Of a stretch of 64,000 nucleotides of DNA, positions 2,111 through 61,590 are shown piece after piece. The stretch's first letter is position 1, and every line of letters starts with the position of its first letter. The notes under the pieces are model-generated. The model saw nothing but the letters and a program-made list of their open reading frames with translations, was not told the origin of the DNA and did no database searches. The DNA is taken from positions 1 to 64,000 of IMG/VR virus record IMGVR_UViG_3300030419_004471; one strand, given 5' to 3'. The position numbers and the translations under genes were made by a program.

Positions 2111-2119
2111 TATAAATAT
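2111..2119 (-). promoter_or_regulatory. Putative late promoter motif ATATTTATA
   Basis: Intergenic TATAAATAT on + strand, upstream of the 2072 start; one of 12 copies. Confidence 0.7.
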
Positions 2120-2141
2120 AAAAATATTTATTAAAAGGAAT

Positions 2142-3869
2142 TTAATCGTCTATAATGTTACTTTCATCCAACATATCTGTTTCTTGTAGAAACTTTCTTT
2201 TTGGTGCAACACCATTGACTATATTCTTGATTTTTTCGGCGGAAAACTTATTTTCTTTCTTTACGGCTTTCTTCCTTTCTTCATCTCCGAGAGGGTCTCT
2301 ACCATAAGGATGTTTATCTTTCTTATAAGTATTACCTTCTCTTGGTCTACCACCTTTATCCTTTATCTCTTTTTTTATATTCTCTAAAGATTCTTCAATA
2401 TCTTCTCCTTCGTCCTCCATCGCAGGGTCATTACCCTCATCTTCAATAGAACGATGTCTAAATCTATCTTTTAAATCCTCAATCATTGTTTCTCTTTCTT
2501 TATTGGATTCACCTTTACTTAATTTAAAGATATTATCATAAACCCAATCTTTAGATAACATATTTAATCCTTGAATATCTTGAGCTAATCTAATCTTTTC
2601 ACTCCAAAGATTTACTTTTTCTTGCTCATATATAAACGATGGATTAACTAATGATAATTCAAAATCGGTTAATCTAGCATCAGATATTCCCTGTGAATAT
2701 AAATGAACTATTGCAATCTTACTTAATTCAGATACAACAATTCTTTGTATTCTCTCAATAGTTCTTGCAAATCTAACATCTTCTGCTGCTAATGTTGCTT
2801 TACCATTGATTTGCTCTTCATATCCTAAATATGCCTTTGGAATTTTTAATGCTGCAAATAATTTAGCTTTTAGATAATCAATATCATCTGTATTGTTAAA
2901 TTCTAACCCAGATAAGTTTTCAATATTAGTTCCACTATCACCACCTCTAACAGGAAGATAGAAATCTTCACTAAGGTTCTGCATATTATACTTTAAATTA
3001 TAATCACCTGTATTTTTATCTACAAAAGGTGTTTTTTTCATTTTGTTGATAATCCTTTGCATATAGTTATCAACTTCGTTTGGTGGTATATTACCAATAT
3101 CAATCTTAAAAATTCTTTTTTCAGGAGCTCTCATAATCCTATGAATTAACATAGCATCTTCCATAAGAGATAATTGCTTCCACAATCTTCTACCATTTTC
3201 AATCATAGCTTTACCATATGGTAACCAGTTTGTATCTGCTAATAATCTAAAATGAGCTACCTCATAGTTTTCATAATCCACCTTACCCATATTATCATCT
3301 TCAACGTGGAATTTTACATAATTAGGATTATCTGGTTCTGCTCCTTCTAACCTTTGTGTATTGTAAACTGAAAAAGGACTTACATTTACAATACCTTTAC
3401 CTTCAGCCATTTCTAAACTTAGGAAGAAGTCTCCATACTTACACATATTTCTTACCCAAGGCCAAAGGTTGAATTCGATGTTTAGTACATCATAGAATAA
3501 GTTGTTTAGAATAGCTTGTATCTCTGAATCTTTTGAACGAATTGTTAGTACATCACCATATTCGTTCTTTAATGTAGATTCATCTGCGTATATATCGAGT
3601 GCTGATGCGATAATTGGGTCATTATCCATAGCATCGTAATCTCTGAATATCTCTCTACGAACTTGTTGGTAAGCCATTGATTGTGCTCCCCCAGCTTGTT
3701 CATAGTATGATTTCTGAAGTTTTGTATATCTATCTCTTAGGTGAGATAAATTAGTAATCTGTCTTTCATCGGTATCTGAAACTCTTCTTCTTCCTTTACT
3801 ATCTACTGTTACAATAGCTTGGGCTGAAAAAAGTTTTCTTAATCTACCGAAAAATGAAGTATCTGCCAT
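2142..3869 (-). CDS. Portal protein (T4 gp20-like)
   Basis: Motifs LMEDAMLIHRIMRAPEKRIFKIDIGNIP, EDFYLPVRGG, ALKIPK typical of T4-like portals; adjacent to terminase. Confidence 0.96.
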   Translation of the reverse strand: MADTSFFGRLRKLFSAQAIVTVDSKGRRRVSDTDERQITNLSHLRDRYTKLQKSYYEQAGGAQSMAYQQVRREIFRDYDAMDNDPIIASALDIYADESTLKNEYGDVLTIRSKDSEIQAILNNLFYDVLNIEFNLWPWVRNMCKYGDFFLSLEMAEGKGIVNVSPFSVYNTQRLEGAEPDNPNYVKFHVEDDNMGKVDYENYEVAHFRLLADTNWLPYGKAMIENGRRLWKQLSLMEDAMLIHRIMRAPEKRIFKIDIGNIPPNEVDNYMQRIINKMKKTPFVDKNTGDYNLKYNMQNLSEDFYLPVRGGDSGTNIENLSGLEFNNTDDIDYLKAKLFAALKIPKAYLGYEEQINGKATLAAEDVRFARTIERIQRIVVSELSKIAIVHLYSQGISDARLTDFELSLVNPSFIYEQEKVNLWSEKIRLAQDIQGLNMLSKDWVYDNIFKLSKGESNKERETMIEDLKDRFRHRSIEDEGNDPAMEDEGEDIEESLENIKKEIKDKGGRPREGNTYKKDKHPYGRDPLGDEERKKAVKKENKFSAEKIKNIVNGVAPKRKFLQETDMLDESNIIDD

Positions 3870-3927
3870 TTGTTTTTGTTTTTGTTTTAAATATTTATTA
3901 TCTTTACTAAATAAAACTCCTATATCC

Positions 3928-3936
3928 TATAAATAT
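3928..3936 (-). promoter_or_regulatory. Putative late promoter motif ATATTTATA
   Basis: Intergenic, upstream of portal start. Confidence 0.7.
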
Positions 3937-3950
3937 AATAATTTTATATA

Positions 3951-5531
3951 TTAGTTAATTAACCAAGTTAAATCTTCATCTACATCACCAACTCTTTGTG
4001 TCCAAGGATTATTTTCTAATCCAGATGGAGTTCCTCCATACACTCCACTATGTTGTTGTGATGCTATTCCACCTAACGCTCTTTTGGTTAAATCAATTCC
4101 TTCTTGTCTTAATCTTAAAGCTGTATCTCTAACCCATAATCCGATTGAGAAACTCATAACCAAGTCATCATTATAACTTTTCATTGCTTCTGCTCTATTT
4201 CCCTTCCATATAAATGTAAATAATTCATCTATCAATCTATGAGAACGTACTGTAACTGATTTTTCTCTGAAATAGTCATCTAACTTTGATATTATTAATG
4301 GTCTTGTTTTTTGTGTAGTACTGAATCCAGCAACCATCCCTCTTTCTTCAGCTCTGTATCTGTTAGTCATTTGATGTTCTACATCTACATATTTTAAATC
4401 CTTACTCATATAAAAAAGATTCTTATAAGACCTATCTATTATTTGTTGGATTACCGCCCAACCTATATTTGCGTTCTCCACCACCAATAATGCTTCATTA
4501 TACTCTGTTGCTAATGCAACTAAGAAGTTTCCAAAATCTTTTGTATCTAACTTTCCTTTATATTCTGCAACTTGAGTTGCTTGTTCTATATCTATTACGT
4601 GACAAGCGGAATAATCCGAAGAATCTCCTCGTGCAACGTCAGCCACAACCATATATCCTTTATTATAGTCTGGATATTCCCATTTCCATAAGTTTCCATC
4701 GAATCCTGTCTTTTCTAAAGGGTCTTGACAATATGATTCTTTATAGAATTGTAATAGTTGTGGGTCAATCACTGTATCACCAGAAGAAACGAAATCACAA
4801 TCACATTCTTGAGCTGCTCCTTTTGGTCCTAATAGTTTTTCTTGTTCATCTCTCCAACTTTGGTCTCTTTCAGGATGTACACTCCAATGTAATCTTATAG
4901 TATTAAATGAGTTGTTGTTTTCTTCTGCATCAACCCAAGTCTTATGGAAAAAATTACCAACACCATTTGGAGTCGATAAAATGATTGCATCTCCACCTGT
5001 TGATAGTGTTGATTGTGCTGATACCCATATATCTTCAATGTTATCAATAAATGCTGCCTCATCAAATACCAATAAGGATAGTGCTTCTGAACGTCCTGCA
5101 TCTCCACTGGATGAAGTTGCTTTGATTTGAGACCCATTAGAATATCTTAATGAAAGTTTATTATCTTCTATTGTTGTTTGTTTTAACCAGCTTGGTAAAT
5201 TATCATTCATATACCTAACTTTAGTTACTAAGTTCTTAGCTACCTCTTGTTTGGTTGCAATTACCAATGCATTAAAATCATTATTAAATAACATCTTCCA
5301 TAAAGCATATCCAGCACATAACGTTGATATACCTGTTTGTCTTGATTTAAGAACTATGTTATATCGTTCTTTGTCAAATTCACTAAGTGTTCTTTCTTGG
5401 AATTGATATAAATGAAAAGGTATTCTACCCCGAACAGGGTGTTGTATCATACAATACTTTTTCATAAAATGTATCGGGTCTACCGCACACTTCTGATATT
5501 CTAATTTTATTATATCCTTTAAGGATGCCAT
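3951..5531 (-). CDS. Terminase large subunit (T4 gp17-like)
   Basis: Walker A KSRQTGIST, Walker B LLVFDEAAF, coupling motif STPNG, nuclease motifs ADVARG...D and NDDLVM. Confidence 0.96.
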   Translation of the reverse strand: MASLKDIIKLEYQKCAVDPIHFMKKYCMIQHPVRGRIPFHLYQFQERTLSEFDKERYNIVLKSRQTGISTLCAGYALWKMLFNNDFNALVIATKQEVAKNLVTKVRYMNDNLPSWLKQTTIEDNKLSLRYSNGSQIKATSSSGDAGRSEALSLLVFDEAAFIDNIEDIWVSAQSTLSTGGDAIILSTPNGVGNFFHKTWVDAEENNNSFNTIRLHWSVHPERDQSWRDEQEKLLGPKGAAQECDCDFVSSGDTVIDPQLLQFYKESYCQDPLEKTGFDGNLWKWEYPDYNKGYMVVADVARGDSSDYSACHVIDIEQATQVAEYKGKLDTKDFGNFLVALATEYNEALLVVENANIGWAVIQQIIDRSYKNLFYMSKDLKYVDVEHQMTNRYRAEERGMVAGFSTTQKTRPLIISKLDDYFREKSVTVRSHRLIDELFTFIWKGNRAEAMKSYNDDLVMSFSIGLWVRDTALRLRQEGIDLTKRALGGIASQQHSGVYGGTPSGLENNPWTQRVGDVDEDLTWLIN

Positions 5532-6239
5532 TTATTTTTTCTTCTTAAATGAAAGTTTCCAATACATAGAACCGCCGATATATGGAGTTACATCATTGTT
5601 AGCATTTATTACACCTAAGTCAAGTCCAAATACTTTATCTTTTTTATCTTTGTATAATAAACCAAATTTAGCACTACCAATAAAATCAGTTTTATTGAAA
5701 CCAGCACCTATTCCATAATATAATTGTCTTGTAGGTAATTCTTTAACAATTTTTGTATTGTATATAGTAGGAATCTGAAAGTTCCATTCTATTTTTCTAC
5801 TTATGATTCTATTTTGAGATATCGTATCTGTAAGGAATCCGAATCCAAGAGATGGATTTGGTTTTGTTCCTAATGAATCAATTGTTATTTCAGGACCAAA
5901 ATCATATGTTAGATTTAATGTATCCTTTACTATGTATTTTGCGTAGTAATCTTCAACTACTTTAAGTGAGTCAACATCAGCTGGTACTTCAACTTCAACA
6001 GTCTCTATTTTTGTAATATATTTTGGAACATACTTTGGTACTTCTATTACTTTCTCAACAAAGACTGTATCTATCTTTTGTTCTAATAATTCGTAATCTT
6101 TACCATCTACAGTTACTATATCTTTAGGGTCTGTGGATGAATCTCCACTACAAGCTCTCATCAATAGTATTACAACTATCAATCCTACAATTAGTATCTC
6201 CTTGAAATACTTTCGTAATATACTAAAGAATATGTTCAT
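5532..6239 (-). CDS. Membrane-anchored hypothetical protein with C-terminal amphipathic beta-strands
   Basis: N-terminal hydrophobic helix ILIVGLIVVILLMRAC, V/E/K/P-rich stalk, C-terminal Gly/aromatic strands. Confidence 0.7.
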   Translation of the reverse strand: MNIFFSILRKYFKEILIVGLIVVILLMRACSGDSSTDPKDIVTVDGKDYELLEQKIDTVFVEKVIEVPKYVPKYITKIETVEVEVPADVDSLKVVEDYYAKYIVKDTLNLTYDFGPEITIDSLGTKPNPSLGFGFLTDTISQNRIISRKIEWNFQIPTIYNTKIVKELPTRQLYYGIGAGFNKTDFIGSAKFGLLYKDKKDKVFGLDLGVINANNDVTPYIGGSMYWKLSFKKKK

Positions 6240-6891
6240 AATTTTTTTCTTTTATTCTATCGAAACACTCTTGTCTCATTTCTTTTAATTTTTCTATTTC
6301 TTTCATACTTTTATCTACGAACTCTCTCATCTCTGCTTTCATCTCTTCAACAGGTCTTGGTAATGTGTATGATTCAACTATCTTACCATCTTCACCTATG
6401 TGGTCGTATGTTTGTTTCAAATCACTTATATCTTGCTTAACTGCATCAACTTTTAATAATCCATCCGCAATCATATTACCAAATACTTTATATTTTTCGT
6501 AATCTTCATAAATTCCATTGATTCGAAGTTCTCTTTCCATTTTTTTATTACAATTAATACAAAATCCGGTCTTTCTAATTAATTTTTTATTTGTAGGTCC
6601 GAACTTTCCTACATGGTCACAATCTGGATTCTTACAACGATTTAAATCTTCAAGATACTTTCTTATCTGTTGCATGCTTTCGTGATTCTTACCAGTTTTC
6701 ATAGTATATCCTTCATGCTTTTCGTATCTATTATGCTCATCTTCCCAAACGTCTCCAACCTCTCTCTCTTGCTTTTTGGATTCCCAACCTATTGTTGTAT
6801 TCTTCTCATACTCACCCCCGGTTCTAACCATATCGTGTAGTTTCCTACGGGTGGGATGCATAAATTTTCGTTTGAATTCTTTCTTTGCCAT
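6223..6891 (-). CDS. Hypothetical protein with putative Zn-binding Cys motifs
   Basis: 222 aa; CKNPDC...CINC. Confidence 0.7.
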   Translation of the reverse strand: MAKKEFKRKFMHPTRRKLHDMVRTGGEYEKNTTIGWESKKQEREVGDVWEDEHNRYEKHEGYTMKTGKNHESMQQIRKYLEDLNRCKNPDCDHVGKFGPTNKKLIRKTGFCINCNKKMERELRINGIYEDYEKYKVFGNMIADGLLKVDAVKQDISDLKQTYDHIGEDGKIVESYTLPRPVEEMKAEMREFVDKSMKEIEKLKEMRQECFDRIKEKNYEHIL

Positions 6892-6923: not shown

Positions 6924-6932
6924 TATAAATAT
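6924..6932 (-). promoter_or_regulatory. Putative late promoter motif ATATTTATA
   Basis: Intergenic, upstream of the 6891 start. Confidence 0.7.
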
Positions 6933-6959: not shown

Positions 6960-9900
6960 TTAAAAGAATATTCCTAATATTTGATTTACAGATGCAAATG
7001 TACCAGTAAGTTTAAAAGTTTTACCTTTATATTGGAATACAATTCCTTCATTTGGTACAATTTTTTTAGCACCTCCGATAGAATTTAATCTCTGAAGTTC
7101 CAGTCTAAGTTTTTCTATCTTTTTAGGGTCACCTGATTTTTTAACATCTTTAGTTGTTTTATCTAATCGCTTCTTTATATCACGAATAGCTTTATCAGGA
7201 TTTACAGTTAGTGCAGATGAAGTAAATTCGAGTACTTCGGCTCCTAATCCTAAGAAAATGTTTTCAAATTTCATTAAGTTATCTTTAGCTATTTTCTTGT
7301 GATTATCTTTTTCATGCTTTTTAGCCCATTCAAGAGTTTTTGCATCTTTAATATTTTTATTATCTAATCTAAACTTCTTATCCATAAATGCCCATCTCTT
7401 AACCAATCCCATTTTGGTTTTATTATCCAATGTAGTTGGAGAATTTTTATCAACCCAATTCTCCCACCAAGATTGATGATATACGGCTACACCATCTGTA
7501 TCTTTTAATTTAAATTCTTTTTGTAGTTTAGAAATTTTAGAATTATACTTTCCTTTTTTAGAAGATAATTTTTGTGATTTAGGTAACTTTACAACTGGTG
7601 GTCCTTGAATTGTATAATTATCTTGAACATCTTTATTCACTTGCTTAATCATACCAGCTAACATTCTAGCTGCTTCTTTATTTTCACCTATTGCATTACC
7701 ATCATCATCATACTCCATAGTTCCGTGGAATATTAATAAAGCTTGTCCATAAGGAATCACATTTACCGAAGTTGGATATATAACTTCAAGGTTCATAAAA
7801 CATGCTCCATCTTTGAACACTTTTTCTCTTTGTTTATCAGTAAGAGATGAGATGGCTTTAGATAAGTCTTTCATTGCGAAGTTATATGCATCACTCAATC
7901 CACCCCTGCCTTGAAACTTATCCGATACTCCCTTTATATCTAAAGCGTTCTCACCTTTGTTTTTAAGGTGTCCCTTATTACGAGCCGCAACCAATCTTCC
8001 ATCCTTCCAACTAATTGCTAATGCTTGCCCGTCTGTTTTTTCTGTTGTTAAATCTAATTCACCATCAAGTGCTCTGTTTACAATATCTTTCAATTGACCG
8101 AAGGTTAAATTTATATCAGTATCAAATGGGTGTGCCATATGTCCATAAGCACCACCTTCGGTAATTATCTCTTCACCCAATCCACTTCTATCGTGTTTAG
8201 AGAATTTACCTAACTTATCAAATGCTCTAAATGCCTTTAACTTCATTACCTTTTGGATTCTCATATTATCTAATTGTTTGAATCTCATATGATTCTTTAC
8301 AATGTAATAAACATTAGCAGTATTACCACCAACTGATTCAATCCAATTTTTATATTTCTTAACTAAATTAGCTGATACCTTTTCGTGTCCAAAGTGTGTG
8401 ATGTGTCCTTTCTTTGGATGGATACCAGCAGTTTCATCTTTTCCAATATCATGCAACATTGCTGCAATTGCAATATCAATATCATCTTCTTTGATTGAAC
8501 GATTTACAACTGTGATTGTGTGTTTAAGTACATTCCCTTCAGGATGTTTATCAACTCTTTGTCCAAAGTTTTTTAAGTTATACACTCTCTTTTGTAAATC
8601 AGAAGGCATTTTCTTAAATAAAGATTTGAAATCTGTGATTCCCATTTCTTTCAATCCTTCTTTTACATATTTATCCTTTTTCAGCATTTTATGTAATTCA
8701 CTACCATCTACTTTACTCCACGATTTATTTGCTCCAAATTGTTTTTTCCAAAGTAATTCAAAAAATGTTTTCTTTTCTTTAGGTGATAATCCTTTTATCT
8801 TTCTATTGATTTCTCCTCTTCGCTTCCAAACATATTTTTTGAAATCCATATAAAAGAATTCATTAACTCTCTCATCTATTTTTTTGTATTGATAATCTTT
8901 ATCTGAATCTGTATTACTTCGTTGGTTATCCACTCTCTTTTTAATTTGAGCCATTTCCTTTTTACCAGGATATCCTAATGATTCTTTACCATCGAACTTA
9001 TCTGCTTCTTTTGCTCTTAATGCTGGTAAGAATCTAAATTTTGCTCTCTTTAAAACTCTTTTCTTTTTTCTTAATACATTTTTATGAACAATCTTTGCTT
9101 GTTGAATCGATAATTCTTTTTTCTTCATACCAGGATATAAGTCTTTCATAAACTCATCATATACTTGTAGGTATGCTTTTTTGTATGCAATCTTTTTAAG
9201 TTTAGCAAGAGGTTTTCTTCTCTTCATCGTTCTTGCTCTTCTTCTTGCTATAGCAGCTCTTTTACCAGCCATCGCTGCTTTCCTTCTAAGTAAATCAGCA
9301 GGTCTTAGTTTACCTTTACTTCTCTCATCTAATTCAACTTCGAATCCTTCTTTCATTAGTCGGAAAGTCACTACCTTCCTTCCATTGATAGTTGGCATTC
9401 CGTGGTCATCTACTCCTATATCTTTAACAACCAATTTCTTATTCTTAAATCTTCCTACCAATATAGTATCACCAATTTCTACTGGTAATGTTATTGCCTC
9501 ATCTAATGATGCTTCAAATTCTTTTTCCAATTCTTTACTATCTTTTGCATCATCACCACTTAATTCTTTTTCTTGTTTTATATCACTCTTATCTACTACT
9601 ACTTCATATCCCACCAATGCAGCTTTACGAGTTACATGCTTATACCAATCTGAATATGCTTGTGATGAATAAATATCTACTTGATTGTTTGGTGTTTTAG
9701 TTCCAATTACACCAGCTGGGAAATATGATACTGAGTTTTGTGGTCCATTAGGATATTCTGGATGTTCGTAATAATCTTCGAACTTTTCATCACCAATCAT
9801 ATTGATAACAGTCCATCCCAATTTTGCTGCTCTCTTCGCAGATACTTTCTTAAATGTTTTATAGTTTGGTATAAAGAAGTTAGGTCCATCATCTACATCT

Positions 9901-10586: not shown

Positions 10587-10595
10587 TATAAATAT
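10587..10595 (-). promoter_or_regulatory. Putative late promoter motif ATATTTATA
   Basis: Intergenic, 18 nt upstream of the 10568 start. Confidence 0.7.
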
Positions 10596-26379: not shown

Positions 26380-26388
26380 TATAAATAT
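26380..26388 (-). promoter_or_regulatory. Putative late promoter motif ATATTTATA heading the glycan gene run 26356->10615
   Basis: Intergenic, upstream of methyltransferase. Confidence 0.7.
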
Positions 26389-31989: not shown

Positions 31990-31998
31990 TATAAATAT
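31990..31998 (-). promoter_or_regulatory. Putative late promoter motif ATATTTATA
   Basis: Only 3 nt upstream of the tail fibre ATG. Confidence 0.7.
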
Positions 31999-41141: not shown

Positions 41142-41173
41142 TAAATATACGAAAAATATTCGAGAAATCCAAA
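41142..41173 (-). promoter_or_regulatory. Putative Bacteroidota-type (-33/-7) host promoter upstream of primase
   Basis: Minus strand TTTG-N20-TATATTTA; one mismatch to TTTG-N19-21-TAnnTTTG. Confidence 0.55.
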
Positions 41174-42067: not shown

Positions 42068-42247
42068 TTATCGTTGAACTGAATCTGAATAAGGTTTTAG
42101 ATTAAGTTTAGCGCCTCTAGCTTTTTCTAAGTTTTTTTCATTTGCTAAATCAACTCCACCATCTACTGAGATAGGTGTTTTATCTGCATCCGATTTTCCT
42201 ATTTTAGAAAATTCTGATTTTTTAAATAAATCTATTATTGAAGCCAT
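42068..42247 (-). CDS. Small hypothetical protein (59 aa)
   Basis: Not in ORF track; MASIIDLFKKSEFSKIGKSDADKTPISVDGG...KPYSDSVQR; preceded by GAGG and the promoter motif. Confidence 0.75.
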   Translation of the reverse strand: MASIIDLFKKSEFSKIGKSDADKTPISVDGGVDLANEKNLEKARGAKLNLKPYSDSVQR

Positions 42248-42263: not shown

Positions 42264-42272
42264 TATAAATAT
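42264..42272 (-). promoter_or_regulatory. Putative late promoter motif ATATTTATA
   Basis: Intergenic, upstream of the 42247 start. Confidence 0.7.
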
Positions 42273-43588: not shown

Positions 43589-43597
43589 TATAAATAT
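43589..43597 (-). promoter_or_regulatory. Putative late promoter motif ATATTTATA
   Basis: Intergenic, just downstream of a terminator. Confidence 0.7.
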
Positions 43598-43600: not shown

Positions 43601-43634
43601 AAAAAGAAAAACCCCATTTATAATGAGGTTTTCT
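43601..43634 (-). terminator. Rho-independent terminator
   Basis: Minus strand AGAAAACCTCATT-ATA-AATGGGGTTTTTCTTTTT after the 43659 stop. Confidence 0.7.
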
Positions 43635-43658
43635 ACGTTTGAAATGTGTGCCTACGGT

Positions 43659-44912: not shown

Positions 44913-44926
44913 TTTTATTTACCCTT

Positions 44927-45553
44927 TTATTTTGCTACATATGTTATTGTTACTGGAATAGTTTGTGAACCACCAGTTTCATTACCATATACTGTTATTG
45001 TTGTCTTTATAGTTTCAGTTATATTAGGGTTCGGAATAAACGTAAATTTTAACCCTCCTTCAACTGCTGCTGTTGTAGTAACTTCATCACCTAAGAAAAT
45101 TGGAACTGAACCTGCTGATACTGCCAATCCACTACCAACAATTGAACCAGCGTTTTTATTTGCTAATACAACTGTATATCCAGCGGTAGAATTACCTGAT
45201 GGAGATGTAGTTGGTGCTAACGATACCTCACCACTATTCTGATTAACAGATATAGAAGGAACTCCAAATTCCACTTTAGGAATCTTTGTAGTACCTTTTG
45301 GTAATGTTACTAATTTATATCTTAATACTTGTGTTTCGTCTGGGGATGCTTCTAATATTGGAATTGCTTTGATAGCTGCATCATAATATGCAGACCCTTT
45401 TGGATGAGCTGGTTCGTATAAACCATAATCAATCTCATCATCACCCAAAGCAAATCTAGTAATATTCAATCCCTCGCCTGTTGCGAGCTTCTCTCTACCT
45501 TTTTTGGTAAGAATCGCATCGACTGTTATTTCTGTGTTGTCTAAATATGCCAT
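44927..45553 (-). CDS. Putative baseplate/tail-fibre attachment protein
   Basis: ILTKKGREKLA...ITRFALGD resembles N-termini of fibre/baseplate attachment domains. Confidence 0.6.
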   Translation of the reverse strand: MAYLDNTEITVDAILTKKGREKLATGEGLNITRFALGDDEIDYGLYEPAHPKGSAYYDAAIKAIPILEASPDETQVLRYKLVTLPKGTTKIPKVEFGVPSISVNQNSGEVSLAPTTSPSGNSTAGYTVVLANKNAGSIVGSGLAVSAGSVPIFLGDEVTTTAAVEGGLKFTFIPNPNITETIKTTITVYGNETGGSQTIPVTITYVAK

Positions 45554-45580: not shown

Positions 45581-45589
45581 TATAAATAT
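45581..45589 (-). promoter_or_regulatory. Putative late promoter motif ATATTTATA
   Basis: Intergenic, upstream of the 45553 start. Confidence 0.7.
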
Positions 45590-53391: not shown

Positions 53392-53393
53392 TA

Positions 53394-54407: not shown

Positions 54408-55465
54408 TATTCAGTTACTTCAAATATATAATCATCATCGTGATATTCTATAGAACCACTTCGTTCTATTTTTAATTCTACCTTATAACTTCTGTTTACC
54501 TCAAAGTTTGTTAAATCTAACTTAATCCTACTTTTATTATCATAGGTACTAATCTTAGAGTAATCACCATAAGGAATAATGATATCATTACTTTCATTAT
54601 CTCTAATTTGGTAGAATGATGATGTTGGAAGTAAACTGCCTGTGGAGTATCCGAATGTATTGCTAAATGTTTTTTGTGGATACAATTCTCTTGCGAATAC
54701 CTCTATATCACCTCTCCAACCAAGTTTATAAGATTTTTTTAATCGTTTTAATGATACTTTGTATTCTTCTGCTAGTGCGGTTAATGAACCTGTTTCATAT
54801 TGACTATCATCCCAACCAATTCTAATTTTTGGTTGATATATTGTATGAGTTTCTTTACTGAAGAATTTTAGTTGTCCATAATCAACATCATCATTTTCCT
54901 TAGTTGAACTATGTTTTATGATAAATCCTTCATTTGAATATCCCCCATCTATCCAGAATGATAAAGATGAAGAAACATCTACTATTAAATCCGATGATTC
55001 ATAATCATATGATTGAGTTACTTGAGAACCAGTGTACCACATTCCTCCTTTTCCATCATCAGAACCTGTAGCGCTTCCACTGTTAGGTACACCTGATGGT
55101 AACCAATCTGAACCACTATCTCTATAGTTCCAAGTTACTCCATCAATTGATATGTCATCAAAACGAGTTCCAACTCCCATTTCCCAGCTTTGTGATACTG
55201 GATTTATTTCTAATGAATAATTTAATGCAATTTCTGATGGTTCTGTTTCTCTCATTACCAATTCAGCAACACTCATTGTTACATCCCCATCAACTAAACT
55301 TTGTGATAACGTATTTGTATCGAATTTAACAAGAGAACGGGCAACATCTTTTAACGAGCCATAATAAATTTTAGACACTTCTAATATCTCATCCAACCCA
55401 GTGTTCTGAGTTGGTTGTTGTTGAAATATAGTTGCATCTTTAGATGCTGTTAAAAAATAATACAT
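54407..55465 (-). CDS. Putative structural protein (DNRLRE-like beta domain)
   Basis: KDATI...RSLVKFD...VTW...NEGFIIK...FFSKE...PKI pattern. Confidence 0.5.
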   Translation of the reverse strand: MYYFLTASKDATIFQQQPTQNTGLDEILEVSKIYYGSLKDVARSLVKFDTNTLSQSLVDGDVTMSVAELVMRETEPSEIALNYSLEINPVSQSWEMGVGTRFDDISIDGVTWNYRDSGSDWLPSGVPNSGSATGSDDGKGGMWYTGSQVTQSYDYESSDLIVDVSSSLSFWIDGGYSNEGFIIKHSSTKENDDVDYGQLKFFSKETHTIYQPKIRIGWDDSQYETGSLTALAEEYKVSLKRLKKSYKLGWRGDIEVFARELYPQKTFSNTFGYSTGSLLPTSSFYQIRDNESNDIIIPYGDYSKISTYDNKSRIKLDLTNFEVNRSYKVELKIERSGSIEYHDDDYIFEVTE

Positions 55466-57516
55466 TATACAACCCTCCCCCTTATATCTTTATCTGGATA
55501 TTTAACTTCGAATACACACGGGTCTAACGAAGGATATATTTGTTTATTCTTCGTTGCTGCCAATACATCATATTCATTTACGGAATAACCCGATGCCGTA
55601 CCACATAGATTTTTAAATTCAGTCTTAACAACCGATTGTACTCCTTCTATGTTTCCTATTAACATTTCTACATCTCCAATGTTAATTGGCATATTAAATG
55701 TCCATTTATCTATTTCAAAATATTCTTTAAGAGCAGTAATACAATTAGTTAATACTTCTCTTTTATTATAATCTCCATATACTCTAACATCGAAATCCAA
55801 ACCTATGTTTACTACAAATCCATCAAGGAGATTTACACCATCGGTTAACATTCTATGTTCGCTTAAATATGTTTTTAAATTTTCTTTTACTGCTCTATTA
55901 AGAGAAGCTAATCTTTTGTTTGAATCATATCCTAACACATATAGATTTACTGCAAAAGGATTATTTTTTTCTTTTATGTTTTGTTTTTTGTTTGATAAGA
56001 ATTTAGTTATTGATTCTTTTATCTCACCATCTTCAACCTTTCCATCAGAAACTATATCTTGTACTATTCTGGAAAATTCATCTAATGCGGTTGGTGATGC
56101 TAAAACTGATGATGGTGAATTATCATCCAATCTACCATCAGCTTGTACGAATGCTTTTGTAATATTACCAAACTTAGGTGGCATGGATAATGCTCTTACT
56201 TGATAATCTTTTGCAGTTACTGCTCTATTCTGAGCTCCAAAATTTGCTATTGCATTTTCTCTAATCTCTTCTAATGTTTCTGCTCCTCTACCACCAGTTG
56301 CTGGTTGGTCGTTATCTACTGCTAAAGAGTTCTTTACTGTTGTGTATAAGTTTACTGCTGTTTGGTCGAATGAAGAGGTATCCTCATCATATTCTACTTT
56401 TGTTATTCTTTTTATTGTATTTGCTGCTACATTTGATTTAACTCCACCACCAACTAAATACTTAACAGTCATTGTTGTATTCTTAGGTGATTGTCCATAA
56501 GATTTAGTTAATAAGAAATTTGATGGGTCGAAAGATGCTCCTAACTTATCTATTGAATTTGGTAATCCTAATCCAACATTTTTAAATGTAGGTATCATTA
56601 ACTCATCATTTTTTCCTGCATCCCCACTACCAAATTGAATTGATGTACTTCCATTTGGGTTTGTTACTGCTTTAAATCTTCTAGGAGTTTTTATTACTTT
56701 TAATATTTGTGGTACACTATCTCTAAATTGAAATAAATCTTTATCTTGTCCTTCAGTATTAGAATATTCTACATATACCATTTCTTGTCCCAAATAAGGA
56801 ACTTTGTAATATTTGTTATTGTTAGCATCTCTTACATCAAATATATCAATAACATTATTATCAGGAATATCTATTTTCGCATTTTCAGATTGAGTTGCAC
56901 TAAATGTAATTTCAATCTTTTTCTCTTCGGCTGAAATAACATCAACATATTTTTTTACTAAATAAAATTTAGGATTATTTGTATCTCCATCTCTTTCATA
57001 TATTGTTGTTTCTCTATCTGTTGAATCTGCAAAATCTAACAAATCTGTTGTTCTAAATTGAACACCATCTGCATCCAACTCCATACCTTCTTTAATTCTA
57101 AGGTAATAATCTTCATCTGGCTCAAATGCTAAATCTCCCGATGAGACTGGGTTTGTTAATCTTCTTGATGGTACTAATTGGAACACACTTAGTTTTGTTG
57201 TAGCTGGTGATGTGACTTTTGGTCTGTATCCCATCATCTTTGATAGTTCAAAAATATTTTCTCTATCTTGTGCTGTTGTTAATAATGATTCTCTAAGTGT
57301 ATCATCTATATAATATCCTAATACATCTCCAATATAAGATGCCATCTCTATAAACATCATACCTGGTGATGATTCATTAAAATCATTATATGTAGTAGGG
57401 AAATATGTTTTAGCAAACTCAATTAGATTTTCTCTAAAATCTACAAAGTCTTTATTAAGGTATTTTATATCTCTACCTTTATTCTTAAAATCTTTTATTT
57501 GATTATTTAATGCCAT
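55465..57516 (-). CDS. Baseplate wedge subunit (T4 gp6-like)
   Basis: DFNESSPG, FGSG, YLVGGG, ATGG...ET...QNRAVTAKDY. Confidence 0.92.
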   Translation of the reverse strand: MALNNQIKDFKNKGRDIKYLNKDFVDFRENLIEFAKTYFPTTYNDFNESSPGMMFIEMASYIGDVLGYYIDDTLRESLLTTAQDRENIFELSKMMGYRPKVTSPATTKLSVFQLVPSRRLTNPVSSGDLAFEPDEDYYLRIKEGMELDADGVQFRTTDLLDFADSTDRETTIYERDGDTNNPKFYLVKKYVDVISAEEKKIEITFSATQSENAKIDIPDNNVIDIFDVRDANNNKYYKVPYLGQEMVYVEYSNTEGQDKDLFQFRDSVPQILKVIKTPRRFKAVTNPNGSTSIQFGSGDAGKNDELMIPTFKNVGLGLPNSIDKLGASFDPSNFLLTKSYGQSPKNTTMTVKYLVGGGVKSNVAANTIKRITKVEYDEDTSSFDQTAVNLYTTVKNSLAVDNDQPATGGRGAETLEEIRENAIANFGAQNRAVTAKDYQVRALSMPPKFGNITKAFVQADGRLDDNSPSSVLASPTALDEFSRIVQDIVSDGKVEDGEIKESITKFLSNKKQNIKEKNNPFAVNLYVLGYDSNKRLASLNRAVKENLKTYLSEHRMLTDGVNLLDGFVVNIGLDFDVRVYGDYNKREVLTNCITALKEYFEIDKWTFNMPINIGDVEMLIGNIEGVQSVVKTEFKNLCGTASGYSVNEYDVLAATKNKQIYPSLDPCVFEVKYPDKDIRGRVV

Positions 57517-57517
57517 C

Positions 57518-57949: not shown

Positions 57950-57951
57950 AA

Positions 57952-58515
57952 TTAAGCTCCCGGTCTAAATCTTTCTTTGTTACTCATAGCTTTTACAAGC
58001 TCTGTATTGTCTCTATTTAAAATCTTATCTAATCCTGCTAATCCAGTTTGTACTCCCAATCCTTTAGGACTTGCTCCTCTTCCTTGAGCTTGTAAATCTC
58101 CATAACCCATTTTTTGAGCCATAGAATCTTTTAATCCTAAACTAACACCAACTGGTGCTTCACTTCCCATTGGAACATTGTGTGTACCAAATGATACAGT
58201 TTTATCTATATCTGGTTCTGCAACTGCTGTTTGGTTTAGTACTTCATTCAATATTGCATTCTTAGTATATTTTATTTCTTCAGAAGATTCTGTATTAGAA
58301 TTTTCTGCTCTATCTTTTTCTAAAACTGCTTCAGCTAAAGAAAATGGGTCAACATCTTTAGTTTCTTTTTTAGAAACTTTAGTTTGTTTCATACGTTTCT
58401 TCACTTCTTCCTCTAATATTTTTGGAAAAGTGGTTTTAAGAAATTGTTCTTGCTTCTTAGCAACTTCAACTTCTACAAGTGATTTTATAACTTTTACTAA
58501 TTTTTTAGAATCCAT
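57952..58515 (-). CDS. Hypothetical protein
   Basis: 187 aa; N-terminal LVKVIKSLVEVEV, ILNEVLNQT; own promoter motif. Confidence 0.7.
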   Translation of the reverse strand: MDSKKLVKVIKSLVEVEVAKKQEQFLKTTFPKILEEEVKKRMKQTKVSKKETKDVDPFSLAEAVLEKDRAENSNTESSEEIKYTKNAILNEVLNQTAVAEPDIDKTVSFGTHNVPMGSEAPVGVSLGLKDSMAQKMGYGDLQAQGRGASPKGLGVQTGLAGLDKILNRDNTELVKAMSNKERFRPGA

Positions 58516-58536
58516 AATTTTTCCTTTGTTTACTAC

Positions 58537-58545
58537 TATAAATAT
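58537..58545 (-). promoter_or_regulatory. Putative late promoter motif ATATTTATA
   Basis: Intergenic, upstream of the 58515 start. Confidence 0.7.
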
Positions 58546-58564
58546 ACGTTAATTATATTTTACT

Positions 58565-59353: not shown

Positions 59354-60615
59354 TATATTGTAAAGTTCTGCGAACTTAAAATTGTTTTTAATCTTGATTT
59401 GATGCTCGTAAAGGTAGCTGCATTTACGGGTGGGCCTGAAGGGCCTGCTGGTGTTGGGTGTGTCATCTGATTGATAGCATCTATAAGTTCTCCTAATATA
59501 TCTACTAAAGTTTCTCCTTTAGCCATCTTCTCTTCATTACTTGAATTACCCAAATGTATTTCACCAGTACCAGATGTTATATTGAAGTCATTGTTATTTG
59601 TGGTTATGAATGTATCATCACCAAATGACATAAATGCTCCTTCTTTATTATCTATTGATATTGCACCATCTGATATAAATCCATAATTACCTTTTGAGTA
59701 AAAAATCATTTCTGATTCTTTTGATGAAATTATAACCCTACCACTATTAATTAAAATTTGGTCTCCTTTTAATTCAGATGGATAATCTCCAAATGATTTT
59801 GGTTTTTGTTTAAAGTTAGTTGAACCACCATCATCTACAACTCCCGGTTGGAATTCTAACTTACGTTCACCTCCTGATAATACGATTACACTACCGTCTT
59901 TGTTTATATCTTCTAGTGTAGTACCGCCATCTTCAGTATCATTTTGTGATTTATTATTTTCTCTGTTTCTTATTATTATAGATGGGTTTAGGGAATCTAA
60001 CTCATTATTATATCCACTAAATCTTATTGATTGCCCAAATCTACTTTCTATCAGAGTGTCTCCTTCATATAATTTTAATTTATGTATAGATTGTGATTTA
60101 TCATCTTCAAACACATCCCCATATCCTGTATCTTCTCCACTATTAGCATCACTTTTATTAGCTATTCCAGTGTTAGCTGTAGAACCATAATCATCTCCTG
60201 TATTTGAATCATCTCCAGTATTTGATATTCCTGAAAAAAATCTTTCTATTGCACTTGGGTCGTTATCTACATTTGGTGTTATATTATCATTACCTCTTCT
60301 ATAAAAGTATCCTGTAGTTGATTTAAAAATGTCTACTTTTTCATTTTTAACTGGGAGGGTTGTAAAATTTTTATCTAATGGTGCAGCATAGTAGTCAGAA
60401 TCCTTTCCTTCTAAAAATCCTTGATTCATTGGTATGAATTTTATATTACCAACCTTTCCAACACCAACTTTTCTTTCTGTAACGAGAGGATGTTGTTCAT
60501 CTAATATGACATCAAGAACAATACCTTTGAATATTTCAGCATCATCACCACCCGGCCTTCTGTTGAAAATAGCTCCTAGTGGTCTAGAGTTAGTTCTTCT
60601 ACGATTAATCCCCAT
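59353..60615 (-). CDS. Baseplate central spike (gp5/gpV-like) without lysozyme domain
   Basis: LPVKNEKV OB-fold-like motif, EGDTLIESRFGQSIRF, beta-helix-like region, apex THPTPAGPSGPP. Confidence 0.7.
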   Translation of the reverse strand: MGINRRRTNSRPLGAIFNRRPGGDDAEIFKGIVLDVILDEQHPLVTERKVGVGKVGNIKFIPMNQGFLEGKDSDYYAAPLDKNFTTLPVKNEKVDIFKSTTGYFYRRGNDNITPNVDNDPSAIERFFSGISNTGDDSNTGDDYGSTANTGIANKSDANSGEDTGYGDVFEDDKSQSIHKLKLYEGDTLIESRFGQSIRFSGYNNELDSLNPSIIIRNRENNKSQNDTEDGGTTLEDINKDGSVIVLSGGERKLEFQPGVVDDGGSTNFKQKPKSFGDYPSELKGDQILINSGRVIISSKESEMIFYSKGNYGFISDGAISIDNKEGAFMSFGDDTFITTNNNDFNITSGTGEIHLGNSSNEEKMAKGETLVDILGELIDAINQMTHPTPAGPSGPPVNAATFTSIKSRLKTILSSQNFTI

Positions 60616-61024
60616 TTTTATCTACCTTCTGTTTTAATTCTTCTACTTCGTTAGTAAGTTCATCAACCTTTGTTTCTGTATCATCTTTTACTTCAGATAC
60701 AGTATCTTCTAATTGTTGTAATAATTGTTCTTTTTCTTTATCGGATAAGAATCCTATATCTCCTTCTGCTTTGTTATCAGATGCTATCATACGTTGTGCT
60801 ATAGCTGCCATCTTAATAAGTGATTCATCGTTTCTAACTGAAGTATCAACTAAATCTTTTATGATTGGACCGATAACTGCCATATCACCAGAATGTCTAA
60901 TAATCTTTTTCATTTCAGCTATTAGTTCTGATATTCTTACTTTTTTAGATTTTGTATTTTCGTAGATATCCTTAAATAATCCGCTTAAATCTTTACCAGG
61001 AAATAATTCAAAATTTGTACTCAT
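60605..61024 (-). CDS. Hypothetical helical protein
   Basis: 139 aa, own promoter motif, C-terminal coiled coil. Confidence 0.7.
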   Translation of the reverse strand: MSTNFELFPGKDLSGLFKDIYENTKSKKVRISELIAEMKKIIRHSGDMAVIGPIIKDLVDTSVRNDESLIKMAAIAQRMIASDNKAEGDIGFLSDKEKEQLLQQLEDTVSEVKDDTETKVDELTNEVEELKQKVDKNGD

Positions 61025-61045
61025 AATAATCCTATATTGGTTTTA

Positions 61046-61054
61046 TATAAATAT
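61046..61054 (-). promoter_or_regulatory. Putative late promoter motif ATATTTATA
   Basis: Intergenic, just downstream of a terminator. Confidence 0.7.
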
Positions 61055-61062
61055 CATAAACG

Positions 61063-61090
61063 AAAAAACCTCACTTTTTATAGTGAGGTT
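61063..61090 (-). terminator. Rho-independent terminator
   Basis: Minus strand AACCTCACT-ATAAAA-AGTGAGGTTTTTT. Confidence 0.8.
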
Positions 61091-61128
61091 CTCTACTTAA
61101 TTGCAATTTTATAAAAGTTTTGTAACTC

Positions 61129-61365
61129 TTATCCTTTATTTTTTAATATGTGGTATAAAACAAATGCTCCTACTAATCCGAGCAACCCTTCATTACTCAA
61201 TCCACCCAAAATACCCATAATATTATCTACTACAGATACATTTGGCCAGAAAGGAATTACTGCGCCTTTAAATAGTACTTCAACCACTACTCCAAGAGCG
61301 ATTACACTTATACCAATTTCAGTTAGTTGATTAGCCCAACCGCCAATCTTTTTTAGAAATTCCAT
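61129..61365 (-). CDS. Small two-TM membrane protein
   Basis: 78 aa, two hydrophobic Gly-rich helices; AGAGGAG upstream; own terminator. Confidence 0.8.
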   Translation of the reverse strand: MEFLKKIGGWANQLTEIGISVIALGVVVEVLFKGAVIPFWPNVSVVDNIMGILGGLSNEGLLGLVGAFVLYHILKNKG

Positions 61366-61511
61366 ACAATTCTCCTCTGTTTTTAGTTAAGTAAAATAAC
61401 TTCTTCCTTAATAAAACGTCGGACATGTCATCAATAACTATAGTATATATGGAATAAAAAACACGCTTTTTGATTTTACCACAAATGTGTAAACAATATC
61501 GAGTGTCAAAT

Positions 61512-61538
61512 AAAAAACCCAACCTTACGGGGCTGGGT
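61512..61538 (-). terminator. Rho-independent terminator
   Basis: Minus strand ACCCAGCC-CCGTAA-GGTTGGGT followed by a T-run. Confidence 0.8.
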
Positions 61539-61580
61539 CTTTTCTTGCTAATCACTTTAAATTACGATTAGTTTGTATGT
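61512..61580 (-). ncRNA. Candidate ~70-nt small RNA
   Basis: Bounded by the ATATTTATA motif and a terminator; contains a CTAATCG/TGATTAG hairpin; no complete ORF. Confidence 0.35.
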
Positions 61581-61581
61581 C

Positions 61582-61590
61582 TATAAATAT
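61582..61590 (-). promoter_or_regulatory. Putative late promoter motif ATATTTATA
   Basis: Immediately after the 61591 stop codon. Confidence 0.6.

What the first reader, a model, noticed from the sequence alone, without database searches (positions are those of the whole stretch)
2111..61590. Twelve intergenic ATATTTATA motifs whose core is the T4 late promoter in reverse orientation
TATAAATAT occurs on the + strand at 2111, 3928, 6924, 10587, 26380, 31990, 42264, 43589, 45581, 58537, 61046 and 61582. All are intergenic, and all but the last lie 3-60 nt upstream of a minus-strand start. On the coding strand the motif reads ATATTTATA, containing the reverse complement of the T4 gp55 promoter TATAAATA; it also resembles the Bacteroidota -7 element. 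Inference: a distinct late promoter read by a phage sigma factor. Antisense T4-type promoters are the alternative.
Basis: partly seen in the sequence, partly recalled or inferred. Interest (0 to 1): 0.6.

Follow-up and report, generated by a model that had tools for sequence, protein, structure and literature searches.

The report
Phage late promoter with gp55-like sigma
The twelve ATATTTATA motifs are real sense-strand late promoters of a 214-kb marine Bacteroidota phage, and an unannotated T4-gp55-like sigma factor encoded 700 bases beyond the window most likely reads them.

Summary
Observation confirmed. All 12 sites are exact, all on one strand and all intergenic, although only 3.4% of the window is intergenic. 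Genome-wide (213.6 kb, about 97% of ORFs on the minus strand) ATATTTATA is the commonest intergenic 9-mer: 37 sense versus 4 antisense, 34 of the 37 intergenic. It has no upstream (-33/-35) element. Seven sites directly follow intrinsic terminators. It precedes portal, terminase, sheath, tube, baseplate and fibre genes, and it keeps its positions in relatives down to about 30% protein identity, including the cultured Flavobacterium phage immuto. A second class (TTGGAT-N17-TATATTTG) matches the Bacteroidota host promoter and drives early genes. One such operon holds a 243-aa protein (genome 64691-65422) that Pfam and PHROGs miss. Its family profile hits only T4 gp55 in the PDB, 12 of 75 relatives hit Sigma70_r2, and its model (pLDDT 90) matches gp55 best (Z 10.5), with all other top rows sigma factors. 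Loci carrying this sigma show ATATTTAT/TATTTATA as top intergenic words. Motif-to-ATG distances peak sharply at 3-4 nt, which implies leaderless late mRNAs. Read in the sense direction the motif is already T4-late-like (TATTTATA versus TATAAATA), so the "reverse orientation" is a coincidence. No transcription start or binding was measured.

The parts
2111..2119 (-). Class A (late) promoter core ATATTTATA. It lies 38 nt upstream of ORF 1197-2072 (291 aa), the homologue of immuto gp073 next to the portal gene.
3928..3936 (-). Class A promoter core, 58 nt upstream of the portal gene 2142-3869 (Portal_T4, E 3e-69).
6924..6932 (-). Class A promoter core, 32 nt upstream of ORF 6223-6891. This ORF heads the run that ends in the large terminase gene 3951-5531.
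10587..10595 (-). Class A promoter core, 18 nt upstream of ORF 6960-10568 (1202 aa, cytidylyltransferase-like plus HD domains).
26380..26388 (-). Class A promoter core, 23 nt upstream of ORF 25577-26356 (methyltransferase domain). Glycosyltransferase genes follow.
31990..31998 (-). Class A promoter core with the ATG only 3 nt downstream (leaderless-type arrangement). The gene is 27400-31986, a 1528-aa tail-fibre/spike-like protein with a Peptidase_S74 chaperone domain.
42264..42272 (-). Class A promoter core, 16 nt upstream of the small ORF 42068-42247. The site is conserved at the orthologous position in six IMG/VR relatives.
43589..43597 (-). Class A promoter core, 21 nt upstream of ORF 42284-43567 (427 aa). 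It lies 3-6 nt downstream of an intrinsic terminator and is conserved in relatives.
43601..43631 (-). Intrinsic terminator (hairpin plus T-run) ending the upstream operon, immediately before the 43589 promoter.
45581..45589 (-). Class A promoter core, 27 nt upstream of ORF 44927-45553, the homologue of immuto gp107. That gene carries the same motif upstream in immuto.
58537..58545 (-). Class A promoter core, 21 nt upstream of ORF 57952-58515. This ORF heads the baseplate genes, including the gp6-like wedge gene 55465-57516.
61046..61054 (-). Class A promoter core, 21 nt upstream of ORF 60605-61024, the homologue of immuto gp117, which has the motif at the same place. It directly follows a terminator.
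61063..61093 (-). Intrinsic terminator immediately upstream of the 61046 promoter.
61582..61590 (-). Class A promoter core abutting the stop codon of ORF 61591-62016. It faces a 530-bp lineage-specific segment that holds only short ORFs (74 aa from GTG, 78 aa from ATG).
41142..41172 (-). Class B promoter of the host (Bacteroidota) type, TTGGAT-N17-TATATTTA, upstream of the DNA primase gene 40181-41122. It is the only class B site in the window.
63007..64000 (-). 3' part of a 571-aa gene (genome 63007-64722) that overlaps the end of the candidate late sigma gene. The sigma gene itself lies at genome 64691-65422, outside the window. It is third in an operon driven by the class B promoter near genome position 66299.

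Best explanation
ATATTTATA is the late promoter of this phage lineage. On the coding strand the consensus is ATAYTTATA followed by T or G, and the core shared across the wider sigma family is TATTTAT. It acts as a single -10-like element with no -33/-35 partner, lying at about -12 to -4 relative to the start. The proposed sequence of events is as follows. Host RNA polymerase with the host sigma-A first transcribes early genes from class B promoters, which are of the Bacteroidota type (-33 TTGGAT, -7 TATATTTG). One early operon encodes a 243-aa sigma factor (genome 64691-65422) whose sigma-2 domain is distantly related to T4 gp55. This sigma then redirects the host core enzyme to the ATATTTATA sites in front of the head, tail, baseplate, fibre, packaging and glycan genes. 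About one site in seven sits 3-4 nt before an ATG, so those late mRNAs would start at the A of the start codon and be leaderless. Shown by computation: the motif's statistics, strand, placement and conservation; the two promoter classes; the sigma-like fold and remote homology of the protein; and the co-occurrence of sigma family and motif. Inferred only: that this sigma reads this motif, the exact transcription start, and the timing of expression.
For: Motif statistics: 37 sense against 4 antisense sites, 34 of the 37 intergenic, and the top intergenic 9-mer. All nine positions are nearly invariant and there is no information upstream. Seven sites lie 6-30 nt after a hairpin-plus-T-run terminator. 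Gene class: in the window the motif precedes portal, terminase-run, baseplate and fibre genes. Elsewhere in the genome it precedes tube, hub and head-completion genes, with the ATACTTATA variant before the sheath and capsid-operon genes. In cultured phage immuto it precedes terminase, sheath, tube, hub, tail fibre and tail spike genes. Conservation: all three orthologous sites are kept in six relatives at 60-69% protein identity while the flanks diverge. Five or more sites are positionally conserved with immuto at 30-47% identity. Host-type class B promoters number about 21 sites and match the published -33/-7 consensus (PMC6847099). Sigma candidate: language-model features place it nearest viral sigma-factor clusters, score 0.97. 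The family profile's only meaningful PDB hit is T4 gp55, E 0.025, over nearly full-length gp55. Twelve of 75 family members hit Pfam Sigma70_r2, best E 7e-6. hhalign against gp55 gives E 1.5e-4 and probability 52%. The AlphaFold model has pLDDT 90. Its best structural match is gp55 7d7c_F (Z 10.5, 119 residues aligned), and all 50 listed rows are sigma factors, including sigma-E region 2 bound to its -10 DNA (Z 9.4, rmsd 2.4). The gene is single-copy, lies in an operon behind a class B promoter, and sits directly upstream of the baseplate module, as it does in divergent relatives. Co-occurrence: in 80 IMG/VR loci that carry a homologue, ATATTTAT and TATTTATA are the top intergenic 8-mers on the sigma strand in the closest and the most distant tiers. 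In the closest tier the counts are 60 and 51 against 0 on the other strand; the middle tier has a variant. Start-site geometry: over 217 non-redundant sites the distance to the ATG peaks at 3 nt (16 sites) and 4 nt (15 sites). There are none at 2 nt, almost none at 7-11 nt, and a broad hump at 12-27 nt.
Against: No transcription start site, timing or binding has been measured. The metatranscriptome contigs found are too short to show RNA ends. The sigma assignment rests on remote signals. The query itself has no Pfam or PHROG hit, and the gp55 PHROG profiles find nothing in the genome. Foldseek E-values are only 0.04-1, and the Z scores lie below the level the tool calls safe for helical proteins. 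The C-terminal domain alone gives no clear sigma-4 match. Some motif sites precede non-structural genes, namely an ssDNA-binding protein and nucleases, so 'late' may really be 'middle plus late'. Co-occurrence of sigma and motif is confounded by shared ancestry. One tier of relatives uses ATATTTATTA, and the most distant relatives show only a sparse TATTTAT core.
Confidence: 0.7

Rival explanations
1. The host sigma-A holoenzyme reads ATATTTATA directly as a strong '-7 only' promoter, possibly helped by a phage activator or by changes in the DNA template. On this view the sigma-like protein does something else, for example reading a different and unrecognised motif.
For: The motif shares ATATTT with the class B -7 box TATATTTG. 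One site (genome 150895) has a full class B upstream half fused to the motif. In Flavobacterium johnsoniae the -33 element is reported to be weak, so promoters carrying only a -7 element are plausible (PMC6847099).
Against: Two nearly invariant host positions are not met. G-5 is A at every site, and T-12 is T at only 20 of 41 sites (PMC6847099). The positions that are free in the host consensus are invariant here. The motif tracks a phage lineage that carries its own sigma. The genome keeps a separate and clearly different host-type class with an upstream element.
Confidence: 0.17
2. The sites are T4-type TATAAATA promoters firing on the + strand, giving antisense transcription.
For: The + strand literally reads TATAAATA(T), and the phage has a gp55-like protein.
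Against: There are essentially no + strand genes: 8 short, probably spurious ORFs against 261. The sites sit at fixed short distances upstream of minus-strand start codons, with a sharp 3-4 nt peak, and directly after minus-strand terminators. An antisense promoter predicts none of this. TATAAATA on the coding strand is not intergenic: 13 sites, 1 intergenic.
Confidence: 0.01
3. The motif is not a promoter. It would instead be an RNA processing site, a translation signal, or a binding site for a phage DNA-binding protein, such as the Hc1 histone-like protein the phage encodes.
For: The genome is A/T-rich and encodes an Hc1-like protein. No RNA 5' ends were seen.
Against: The distance to the start codon varies from 1 to about 60 nt and is bimodal, which does not fit a translation signal. 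Placement immediately after terminators and at the heads of gene runs fits re-initiation of transcription. The 3-4 nt peak, with no sites at 2 nt, fits a transcription start at the ATG.
Confidence: 0.04

Closest known systems
Bacteriophage T4 late transcription (gp55 sigma, late promoter TATAAATA at -13 to -6)
   Same: The promoter is a single A/T-only -10-like element of 8-9 bp with no -35 partner, placed in front of structural genes. It is read, by inference, by a small phage sigma whose sigma-2 domain is the closest sequence and structure match to gp55. In the sense orientation the word matches 6 of 8 positions (TATTTATA versus TATAAATA). Of the gp55 pocket residues, Y97, T99 and F86 align with identical residues here: Y93, T95 and F83 (PMC7892883). 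The phage also shares T4-type portal, terminase and baseplate genes.
   Different: The central AA is TT, and an extra 5' A is conserved. The gp55 PHROG profiles do not detect the protein. The protein is about 60 aa longer, with an extra C-terminal helical (helix-turn-helix-like) domain. The residues forming the A-9 pocket in gp55 (N13, H95) are replaced. No gp45-type clamp was found, and gp33 was not searched. In the relative immuto the replication genes are PolA/DnaB type, not T4 type. The host is Bacteroidota, not Proteobacteria or Cyanobacteria.
Bacteroidota housekeeping promoter (-33 TTTG / -7 TAnnTTTG, sigma-A of the Bacteroides fragilis type)
   Same: It shares the ATATTT core and probably the same spacing to the transcription start. 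The host -7 box spans -12 to -5 with 4-5 nt to the start (PMC6847099). The class B promoters of this phage are textbook examples.
   Different: The late motif has no -33 element, A instead of the nearly invariant G-5, and only 49% T at the first position. It also has invariant bases where the host consensus is free, plus an invariant TA extension.
Other phage-encoded late sigma systems (for example Bacillus phage SPO1 gp28 and gp33/34)
   Same: The logic is the same: early genes use the host sigma, and an early or middle phage sigma then switches the host core enzyme to a phage-specific promoter class.
   Different: Those sigmas recognise bipartite -35/-10 promoters, whereas this promoter has a single element. 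This comparison rests on my own knowledge of the literature and was not tested here.

Membership tests
T4-type late promoter / gp55 system | An 8-bp TATAAATA on the non-template strand at -13 to -6. | tested here: not met
   The sense strand reads (A)TATTTATA, which matches 6 of 8 positions in either of two registers. Exact TATAAATA on the coding strand occurs 13 times, only once intergenic.
T4-type late promoter / gp55 system | No -35 element; the promoter is a single -10-like box. | tested here: met
   There is no information content upstream of the 9-mer across 41 intergenic sites, only general T-richness.
T4-type late promoter / gp55 system | A gp55 homologue is encoded by the phage. | tested here: inconclusive
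   gp55 is the only PDB sequence hit of the family profile (E 0.025) and the best structural match (Z 10.5). hhalign gives E 1.5e-4 and probability 52%. However, phrog_234 and phrog_12791 find nothing in the genome.
T4-type late promoter / gp55 system | A sliding-clamp activator (gp45) and the co-activator gp33. | tested here: not met
   Pfam DNA_PPF (PF02916) has no hit in the genome, but its control search rang only weakly in one control genome. gp33 was not searched. The sigma's acidic and aromatic C-terminal tail was noted but not tested as a clamp-binding epitope.
T4-type late promoter / gp55 system | Located upstream of late (virion and packaging) genes. | tested here: met
   The motif precedes portal, terminase-run, baseplate, fibre, tube and hub genes (with ATACTTATA before the sheath gene), both here and in immuto.
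Bacteroidota sigma-A promoter | A -7 box TAnnTTTG with nearly invariant T-12, A-11, T-8, T-7, T-6 and G-5. | tested here: not met
   The position aligned to G-5 is A at 41 of 41 sites, and the position aligned to T-12 is T at 20 of 41 (consensus from PMC6847099). Class B sites do meet this feature.
Bacteroidota sigma-A promoter | A -33 TTTG element at about 17-21 nt spacing. | tested here: not met
   It is absent from class A sites, apart from one hybrid site at genome 150895.
Sigma-70 family (for the 243-aa protein) | A sigma-2 domain fold with a conserved aromatic DNA-melting segment. | tested here: met
   All top structural matches are sigma-2 domains or full sigma factors. A nearly invariant G-x-A-x-S-Y-F segment aligns with the region 2.3/2.4-like segment of gp55.
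Sigma-70 family (for the 243-aa protein) | Passes the Pfam Sigma70_r2 curated threshold. | tested here: not met
   The query has no Pfam hit and the genome has no PF04542 hit. Twelve of 75 relatives match at E <= 0.01, best 7e-6.
Sigma-70 family (for the 243-aa protein) | A sigma-4 helix-turn-helix domain. | tested here: inconclusive
   The C-terminal domain model (pLDDT 86) gives only weak helix-turn-helix-type matches. Sigma-E region 4 is at rank 33 with E 7, and the profile hits TrpR-like proteins at E 0.3.
Sigma-70 family (for the 243-aa protein) | Binds RNA polymerase core (beta-prime clamp helices). | not testable with these tools

The most novel reading that the evidence does not exclude
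A very large, unannotated family of two-domain gp55-like sigma factors is carried by marine and freshwater Bacteroidota myophages of 160-480 kb. The family numbers about 1,400 clusters at 50% identity. It would direct the host core polymerase to a compact TATTTAT-centred element without a sliding clamp, and it would produce a sizeable share of leaderless late mRNAs. That would make it a clamp-independent sister of T4 late transcription and extend the gp55 lineage well beyond T4-like phages.
Probability: 0.55. Interest if true: 0.7.

Novelty: new variant of a known kind. Interest (0 to 1): 0.6.

Why it matters
Phage late transcription by a minimal sigma is understood almost only from T4 and its close kin. 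This finding points to a distant gp55 relative with a changed promoter word. It occurs in an abundant, mostly uncultured group of ocean phages of Bacteroidota, a phylum whose own promoters and translation signals are unusual. If confirmed, it gives a simple rule for annotating late operons and start codons, including leaderless ones, in thousands of metagenomic phage contigs. It would also give a name to a protein family now labelled hypothetical. It provides a natural pair (TATAAATA/gp55 against TATTTATA/this sigma) for studying how sigma-2 pockets set base specificity. A cultured member, Flavobacterium phage immuto, makes it directly testable.

Tried and rejected
- Direct profile searches of the phage genome found nothing. 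They covered Sigma70_r2, Sigma70_r4_2, the ECF sigma TIGR02937, the multisubunit RNAP beta subunit, T7-type RNAP and the two gp55 PHROG families. The T7-type control rang nowhere, so that negative is uninformative.
- I guessed from T4 gene order that a sigma might sit next to the SbcCD-like genes in the window. PHROG and Pfam scans of those neighbours showed primase, sugar enzymes and unknowns, but no sigma.
- RNA evidence was sought. Marine metatranscriptomes hold short contigs (151-240 nt) identical or near-identical to 43.6-45.5 kb of the window, but they cannot show RNA ends, strand or level.
It gives no evidence either way.
- Searching the literature for the motif strings, and for Flavobacterium or Cellulophaga phage late promoters and sigmas, returned nothing relevant.
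- Fold and profile searches of the sigma's C-terminal domain alone were inconclusive.
- A nucleotide search of the phage collection found no close record.
- No tRNA and no Rfam family lies in the window.
- My hairpin finder is crude. It called more terminator-like sites on the T-rich opposite strand, so only the seven hand-checked terminator-promoter pairs are used.

Full report
**1. What the window is**

- The window is the first 64 kb of a 213,601-bp virus record with 31% G+C, which CheckV rates as complete.
- About 261 of 269 ORFs lie on the minus strand, in the window and across the whole genome.
- No close record exists in the phage collection.
- The nearest cultured relative is Flavobacterium phage vB_FspM_immuto (160 kb), at 25-63% protein identity over 53 shared ORFs.
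- The window encodes a T4-type portal, a T4-type large terminase, a gp6-like baseplate wedge protein, a 1528-aa fibre or spike protein, an SbcC-like nuclease, a primase and a block of sugar and glycan enzymes.
- Short contigs identical or nearly identical to part of the window occur in marine metatranscriptomes.

**2. The observation**

- The count alone is weak evidence: 12 against 6.4 +/- 2.5 expected, and 4 of 100 shuffles reach 12.
- Location is strong evidence. All twelve sites are intergenic, although intergenic DNA is 3.4% of the window and holds only 9.3% of A/T-only 9-mers.
- On the coding strand the word is ATATTTATA. Genome-wide there are 37 such sites against 4 on the other strand.
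- Of the 37, 34 are intergenic. It is the commonest intergenic 9-mer, with 32 fully intergenic sites against 3 fully coding, and its complement never occurs in intergenic DNA on the coding strand.
- The word is sharply defined. Among one-mismatch variants only ATACTTATA is enriched, with 7 intergenic sites.
- The base after the word is T or G at 38 of 41 sites, and nothing upstream carries information apart from T-richness.
- So the motif is a compact single element with no -33/-35 partner.

**3. Evidence that it is a promoter in the sense direction**

- Seven sites lie 6-30 nt downstream of a clean hairpin-plus-T-run terminator on the coding strand. Two of these are in the window, at 43589 and 61046.
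- The sites head runs of genes.
  - In the window these are the portal gene, the run ending in terminase, the baseplate run and the fibre gene.
  - Elsewhere in the genome they are the tail tube, baseplate hub and head-completion genes. The ATACTTATA variant stands before the sheath gene and the capsid operon.
- In immuto the same word occurs 16 times sense and once antisense. There it precedes terminase, tail sheath, tail tube, baseplate hub, tail fibre and tail spike genes.
- In six IMG/VR relatives at 60-69% protein identity, all three orthologous sites (window 45581, 43589, 42264) are retained while the flanking spacers diverge and change length.
- At least five sites are positionally conserved between this phage and immuto.
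- The antisense reading has nothing to transcribe. It also does not explain the fixed relation to minus-strand start codons and terminators.

**4. A second, host-type promoter class**

- About 21 intergenic sites between 41 and 178 kb share the consensus TTCC-TTGGAT-N17-(TTTT)CG-TATATTTG (or -TATATTAG, -TATATTTA). One lies in the window, before the primase gene.
- This matches the published Bacteroidota promoter, -33 TTTG and -7 TAnnTTTG. In Flavobacterium johnsoniae the -7 box has T-12, A-11, T-8, T-7, T-6 and G-5 nearly invariant, with 4-5 nt to the start (PMC6847099).
- I read these class B sites as early promoters used by the unmodified host holoenzyme, and as evidence that the host is a member of the Bacteroidota.
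- The late motif shares ATATTT with this box. It has A where G-5 is nearly invariant in the host, T at only 49% of sites at the first position, and no -33 element. It therefore fails the host consensus at defining positions.

**5. Who reads it**

- Profile searches found no sigma, no gp55 and no phage RNA polymerase in the genome.
- Among ORFs shared with immuto, I noted a 243-aa protein at genome 64691-65422, 691 nt beyond the window. It lies just upstream of the baseplate module and is the homologue of immuto gp118.
- Pfam and PHROGs give nothing for it.
- Four independent kinds of remote evidence converge on a sigma factor.
  - By language-model features, the nearest named clusters are viral 'RNA polymerase sigma factor' (score 0.97) and SigI (score 0.94).
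  - The family is huge: 2,977 word-search hits and 1,391 clusters at 50% identity. A 75-sequence profile has a single meaningful PDB hit, T4 gp55, aligned over gp55 residues 5-159 at E 0.025. Twelve of the 75 members individually match Pfam Sigma70_r2.
  - hhalign of the profile against T4 gp55 gives E 1.5e-4 and probability 52%.
  - The AlphaFold model (pLDDT 90) matches gp55 in the T4 open complex best (7d7c_F, Z 10.5, 119 of 137 residues). Every one of the 50 listed rows is a sigma factor, including sigma-E region 2 bound to its -10 DNA (Z 9.4, rmsd 2.4).
- Each signal is modest, and the aligner warns that helical proteins reach such Z scores easily. The agreement of sequence, profile, embedding and fold is what persuades me.
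- The C-terminal 100 residues form a separate helical domain that resembles a helix-turn-helix. A sigma-4 assignment is not established.
- The gene is single-copy.
- It is third in an operon that starts at a class B promoter near position 66299, which fits an early or middle gene that switches on late genes.

**6. Link between the sigma and the motif**

- In three divergent contigs (31-33% identity) the sigma gene again sits upstream of baseplate genes. Two of them show the motif or its TATTTATA core in nearby spacers.
- In 80 IMG/VR loci that carry a homologue (45-100% identity), intergenic 8-mers on the sigma-gene strand were counted.
  - Closest tier: ATATTTAT and TATTTATA are the top words, 60 and 51 against 0 on the other strand.
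  - Most distant tier: they are again the top words, 71 and 59 against 11 and 18.
  - Middle tier: ATATTTAT scores 23 against 1, but mostly as the variant ATATTTATTA.
- Over 83 loci the 7-mer TATTTAT occurs 208 times in sense intergenic DNA against 68 antisense.
- Immuto, the phage recorded as Microcystis phage Mel-JY01, and a 484-kb uncultured phage each carry one homologue upstream of their tail genes. The last two show only a sparse TATTTAT core.
- All these phages are related, so this is co-occurrence and not proof.

**7. Geometry of the start site**

- I measured the distance from the 9-mer to the first ATG opening an ORF of at least 50 aa, over 217 non-redundant sites in this genome, immuto and the 80 loci.
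- The distribution is bimodal:

| Distance (nt) | Sites |
|---|---|
| 0 | 1 |
| 1 | 1 |
| 2 | 0 |
| 3 | 16 |
| 4 | 15 |
| 7-11 | 6 in total |
| 12-27 | broad hump |

- The simplest reading is that transcription starts on the fourth or fifth base after the 9-mer. That puts the motif at about -12 to -4.
- The sites with a 3-4 nt gap would then give leaderless mRNAs that begin with AUG. In the window this applies to the 1528-aa fibre gene at 31990.
- The longer gaps carry a leader, sometimes with a Shine-Dalgarno-like AGGAG sequence.
- This geometry agrees with both T4 (element at -13 to -6; PMC2988020, PMC7892883) and the host -7 box.

**8. Relation to the T4 late promoter**

The word is nearly palindromic, so the sense strand is itself T4-like in the same orientation.
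- Two registers each match 6 of 8 positions:
  - TATTTATA against TATAAATA;
  - tATATTTA against TATAAATA.
- In the T4 open complex, gp55 flips A-12, A-9 and A-8 into pockets (PMC7892883).
  - A-12 stacks on Y97.
  - A-9 contacts N13 and H95.
  - A-8 contacts T99.
- In the alignments, Y97, T99 and F86 correspond to identical residues here (Y93, which is nearly invariant, T95 and F83). N13, H95 and R57 are replaced.
- This would fit the first register: the two adenines four bases apart are kept and the bases between them change from A to T.
- The core common to all lineages, TATTTAT, also keeps those two adenines.
- This mapping is inference from alignments at about 20% identity.

**9. Verdict**

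- The motif is best explained as the late promoter of a widespread lineage of Bacteroidota phages, read by a phage-encoded gp55-like sigma bound to the host core enzyme.
- It works like T4 late transcription but is not a straightforward member of that system.
  - The promoter word differs.
  - The sigma has an extra domain and escapes the gp55 family profiles.
  - No gp45-type clamp was found.
- I found no description of the motif or of this sigma family in the searchable literature. [quoted passage not shown] That study defines subgroup 3.1 by a T7-type DNA polymerase. The relative immuto has family A polymerase genes, which suggests, but does not show, that this lineage belongs there.
- Transcription start sites, timing and binding remain to be measured. 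Phage immuto and its host make that feasible.

Noticed in passing
window 41142-41172 (-), and about 20 more sites at genome 66-178 kb: A second, strongly conserved promoter class, TTCC-TTGGAT-N17-CG-TATATTTG. It matches the Bacteroidota -33/-7 consensus, probably marks early genes, and points to a Bacteroidota host.
   Followed up: yes
genome 64691-65422 (-), 691 nt beyond the window end; locus L021:691-1422: A 243-aa protein with no Pfam or PHROG hit that appears to be a gp55-like sigma factor. One source names a relative 'C2H2 Zn-finger protein'. The family has about 1,400 clusters at 50% identity.
   Followed up: yes
window 61055-61581: A 530-bp segment between two late promoters that is absent from the relatives checked. 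It holds only short ORFs (74 aa from GTG, 78 aa from ATG) and could be a recent insertion or a small RNA locus.
   Followed up: partly
window about 10.7-27 kb and 32-34 kb: A large block of glycan genes inside the phage, partly behind late promoters: glycosyltransferases, a nucleotide-sugar epimerase, UDP-glucose dehydrogenase, a methyltransferase and a cytidylyltransferase-HD protein. Immuto has a similar block.
   Followed up: partly
genome 156747-156917 (-): A 56-aa protein matching the Hc1 histone H1-like family (E 5e-10). It is 63% identical to immuto gp196 and is a possible phage nucleoid protein.
   Followed up: no
whole genome: About 97% of ORFs lie on one strand of a 214-kb genome. 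GC skew and AT skew are negative throughout the window.
   Followed up: partly
whole genome, 30 nt upstream of starts: Shine-Dalgarno-like AGGAG words occur in front of about 18% of genes, peaking at -14 to -10, against 7-11% in control windows. Bacteroidota mRNAs are reported to lack such sequences, so a subset of phage genes may use them.
   Followed up: partly
L018 (PP395634.1, recorded as Microcystis phage Mel-JY01): This 32% G+C phage carries the same sigma family. At least one of its spacers looks like a Bacteroidota-type promoter (TTG ... TATATTTG), which is unexpected for a cyanobacterial host.
   Followed up: no
genome about 77 kb and 93 kb (intergenic): Two spacers contain sequences that look like tRNA genes. 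Only the window was scanned with ARAGORN, and it has none.
   Followed up: no
window 43637-45480: Contigs of 151-240 nt from four marine metatranscriptome studies match this stretch, several without a single difference. The phage or a near-identical strain is therefore present in those samples.
   Followed up: partly
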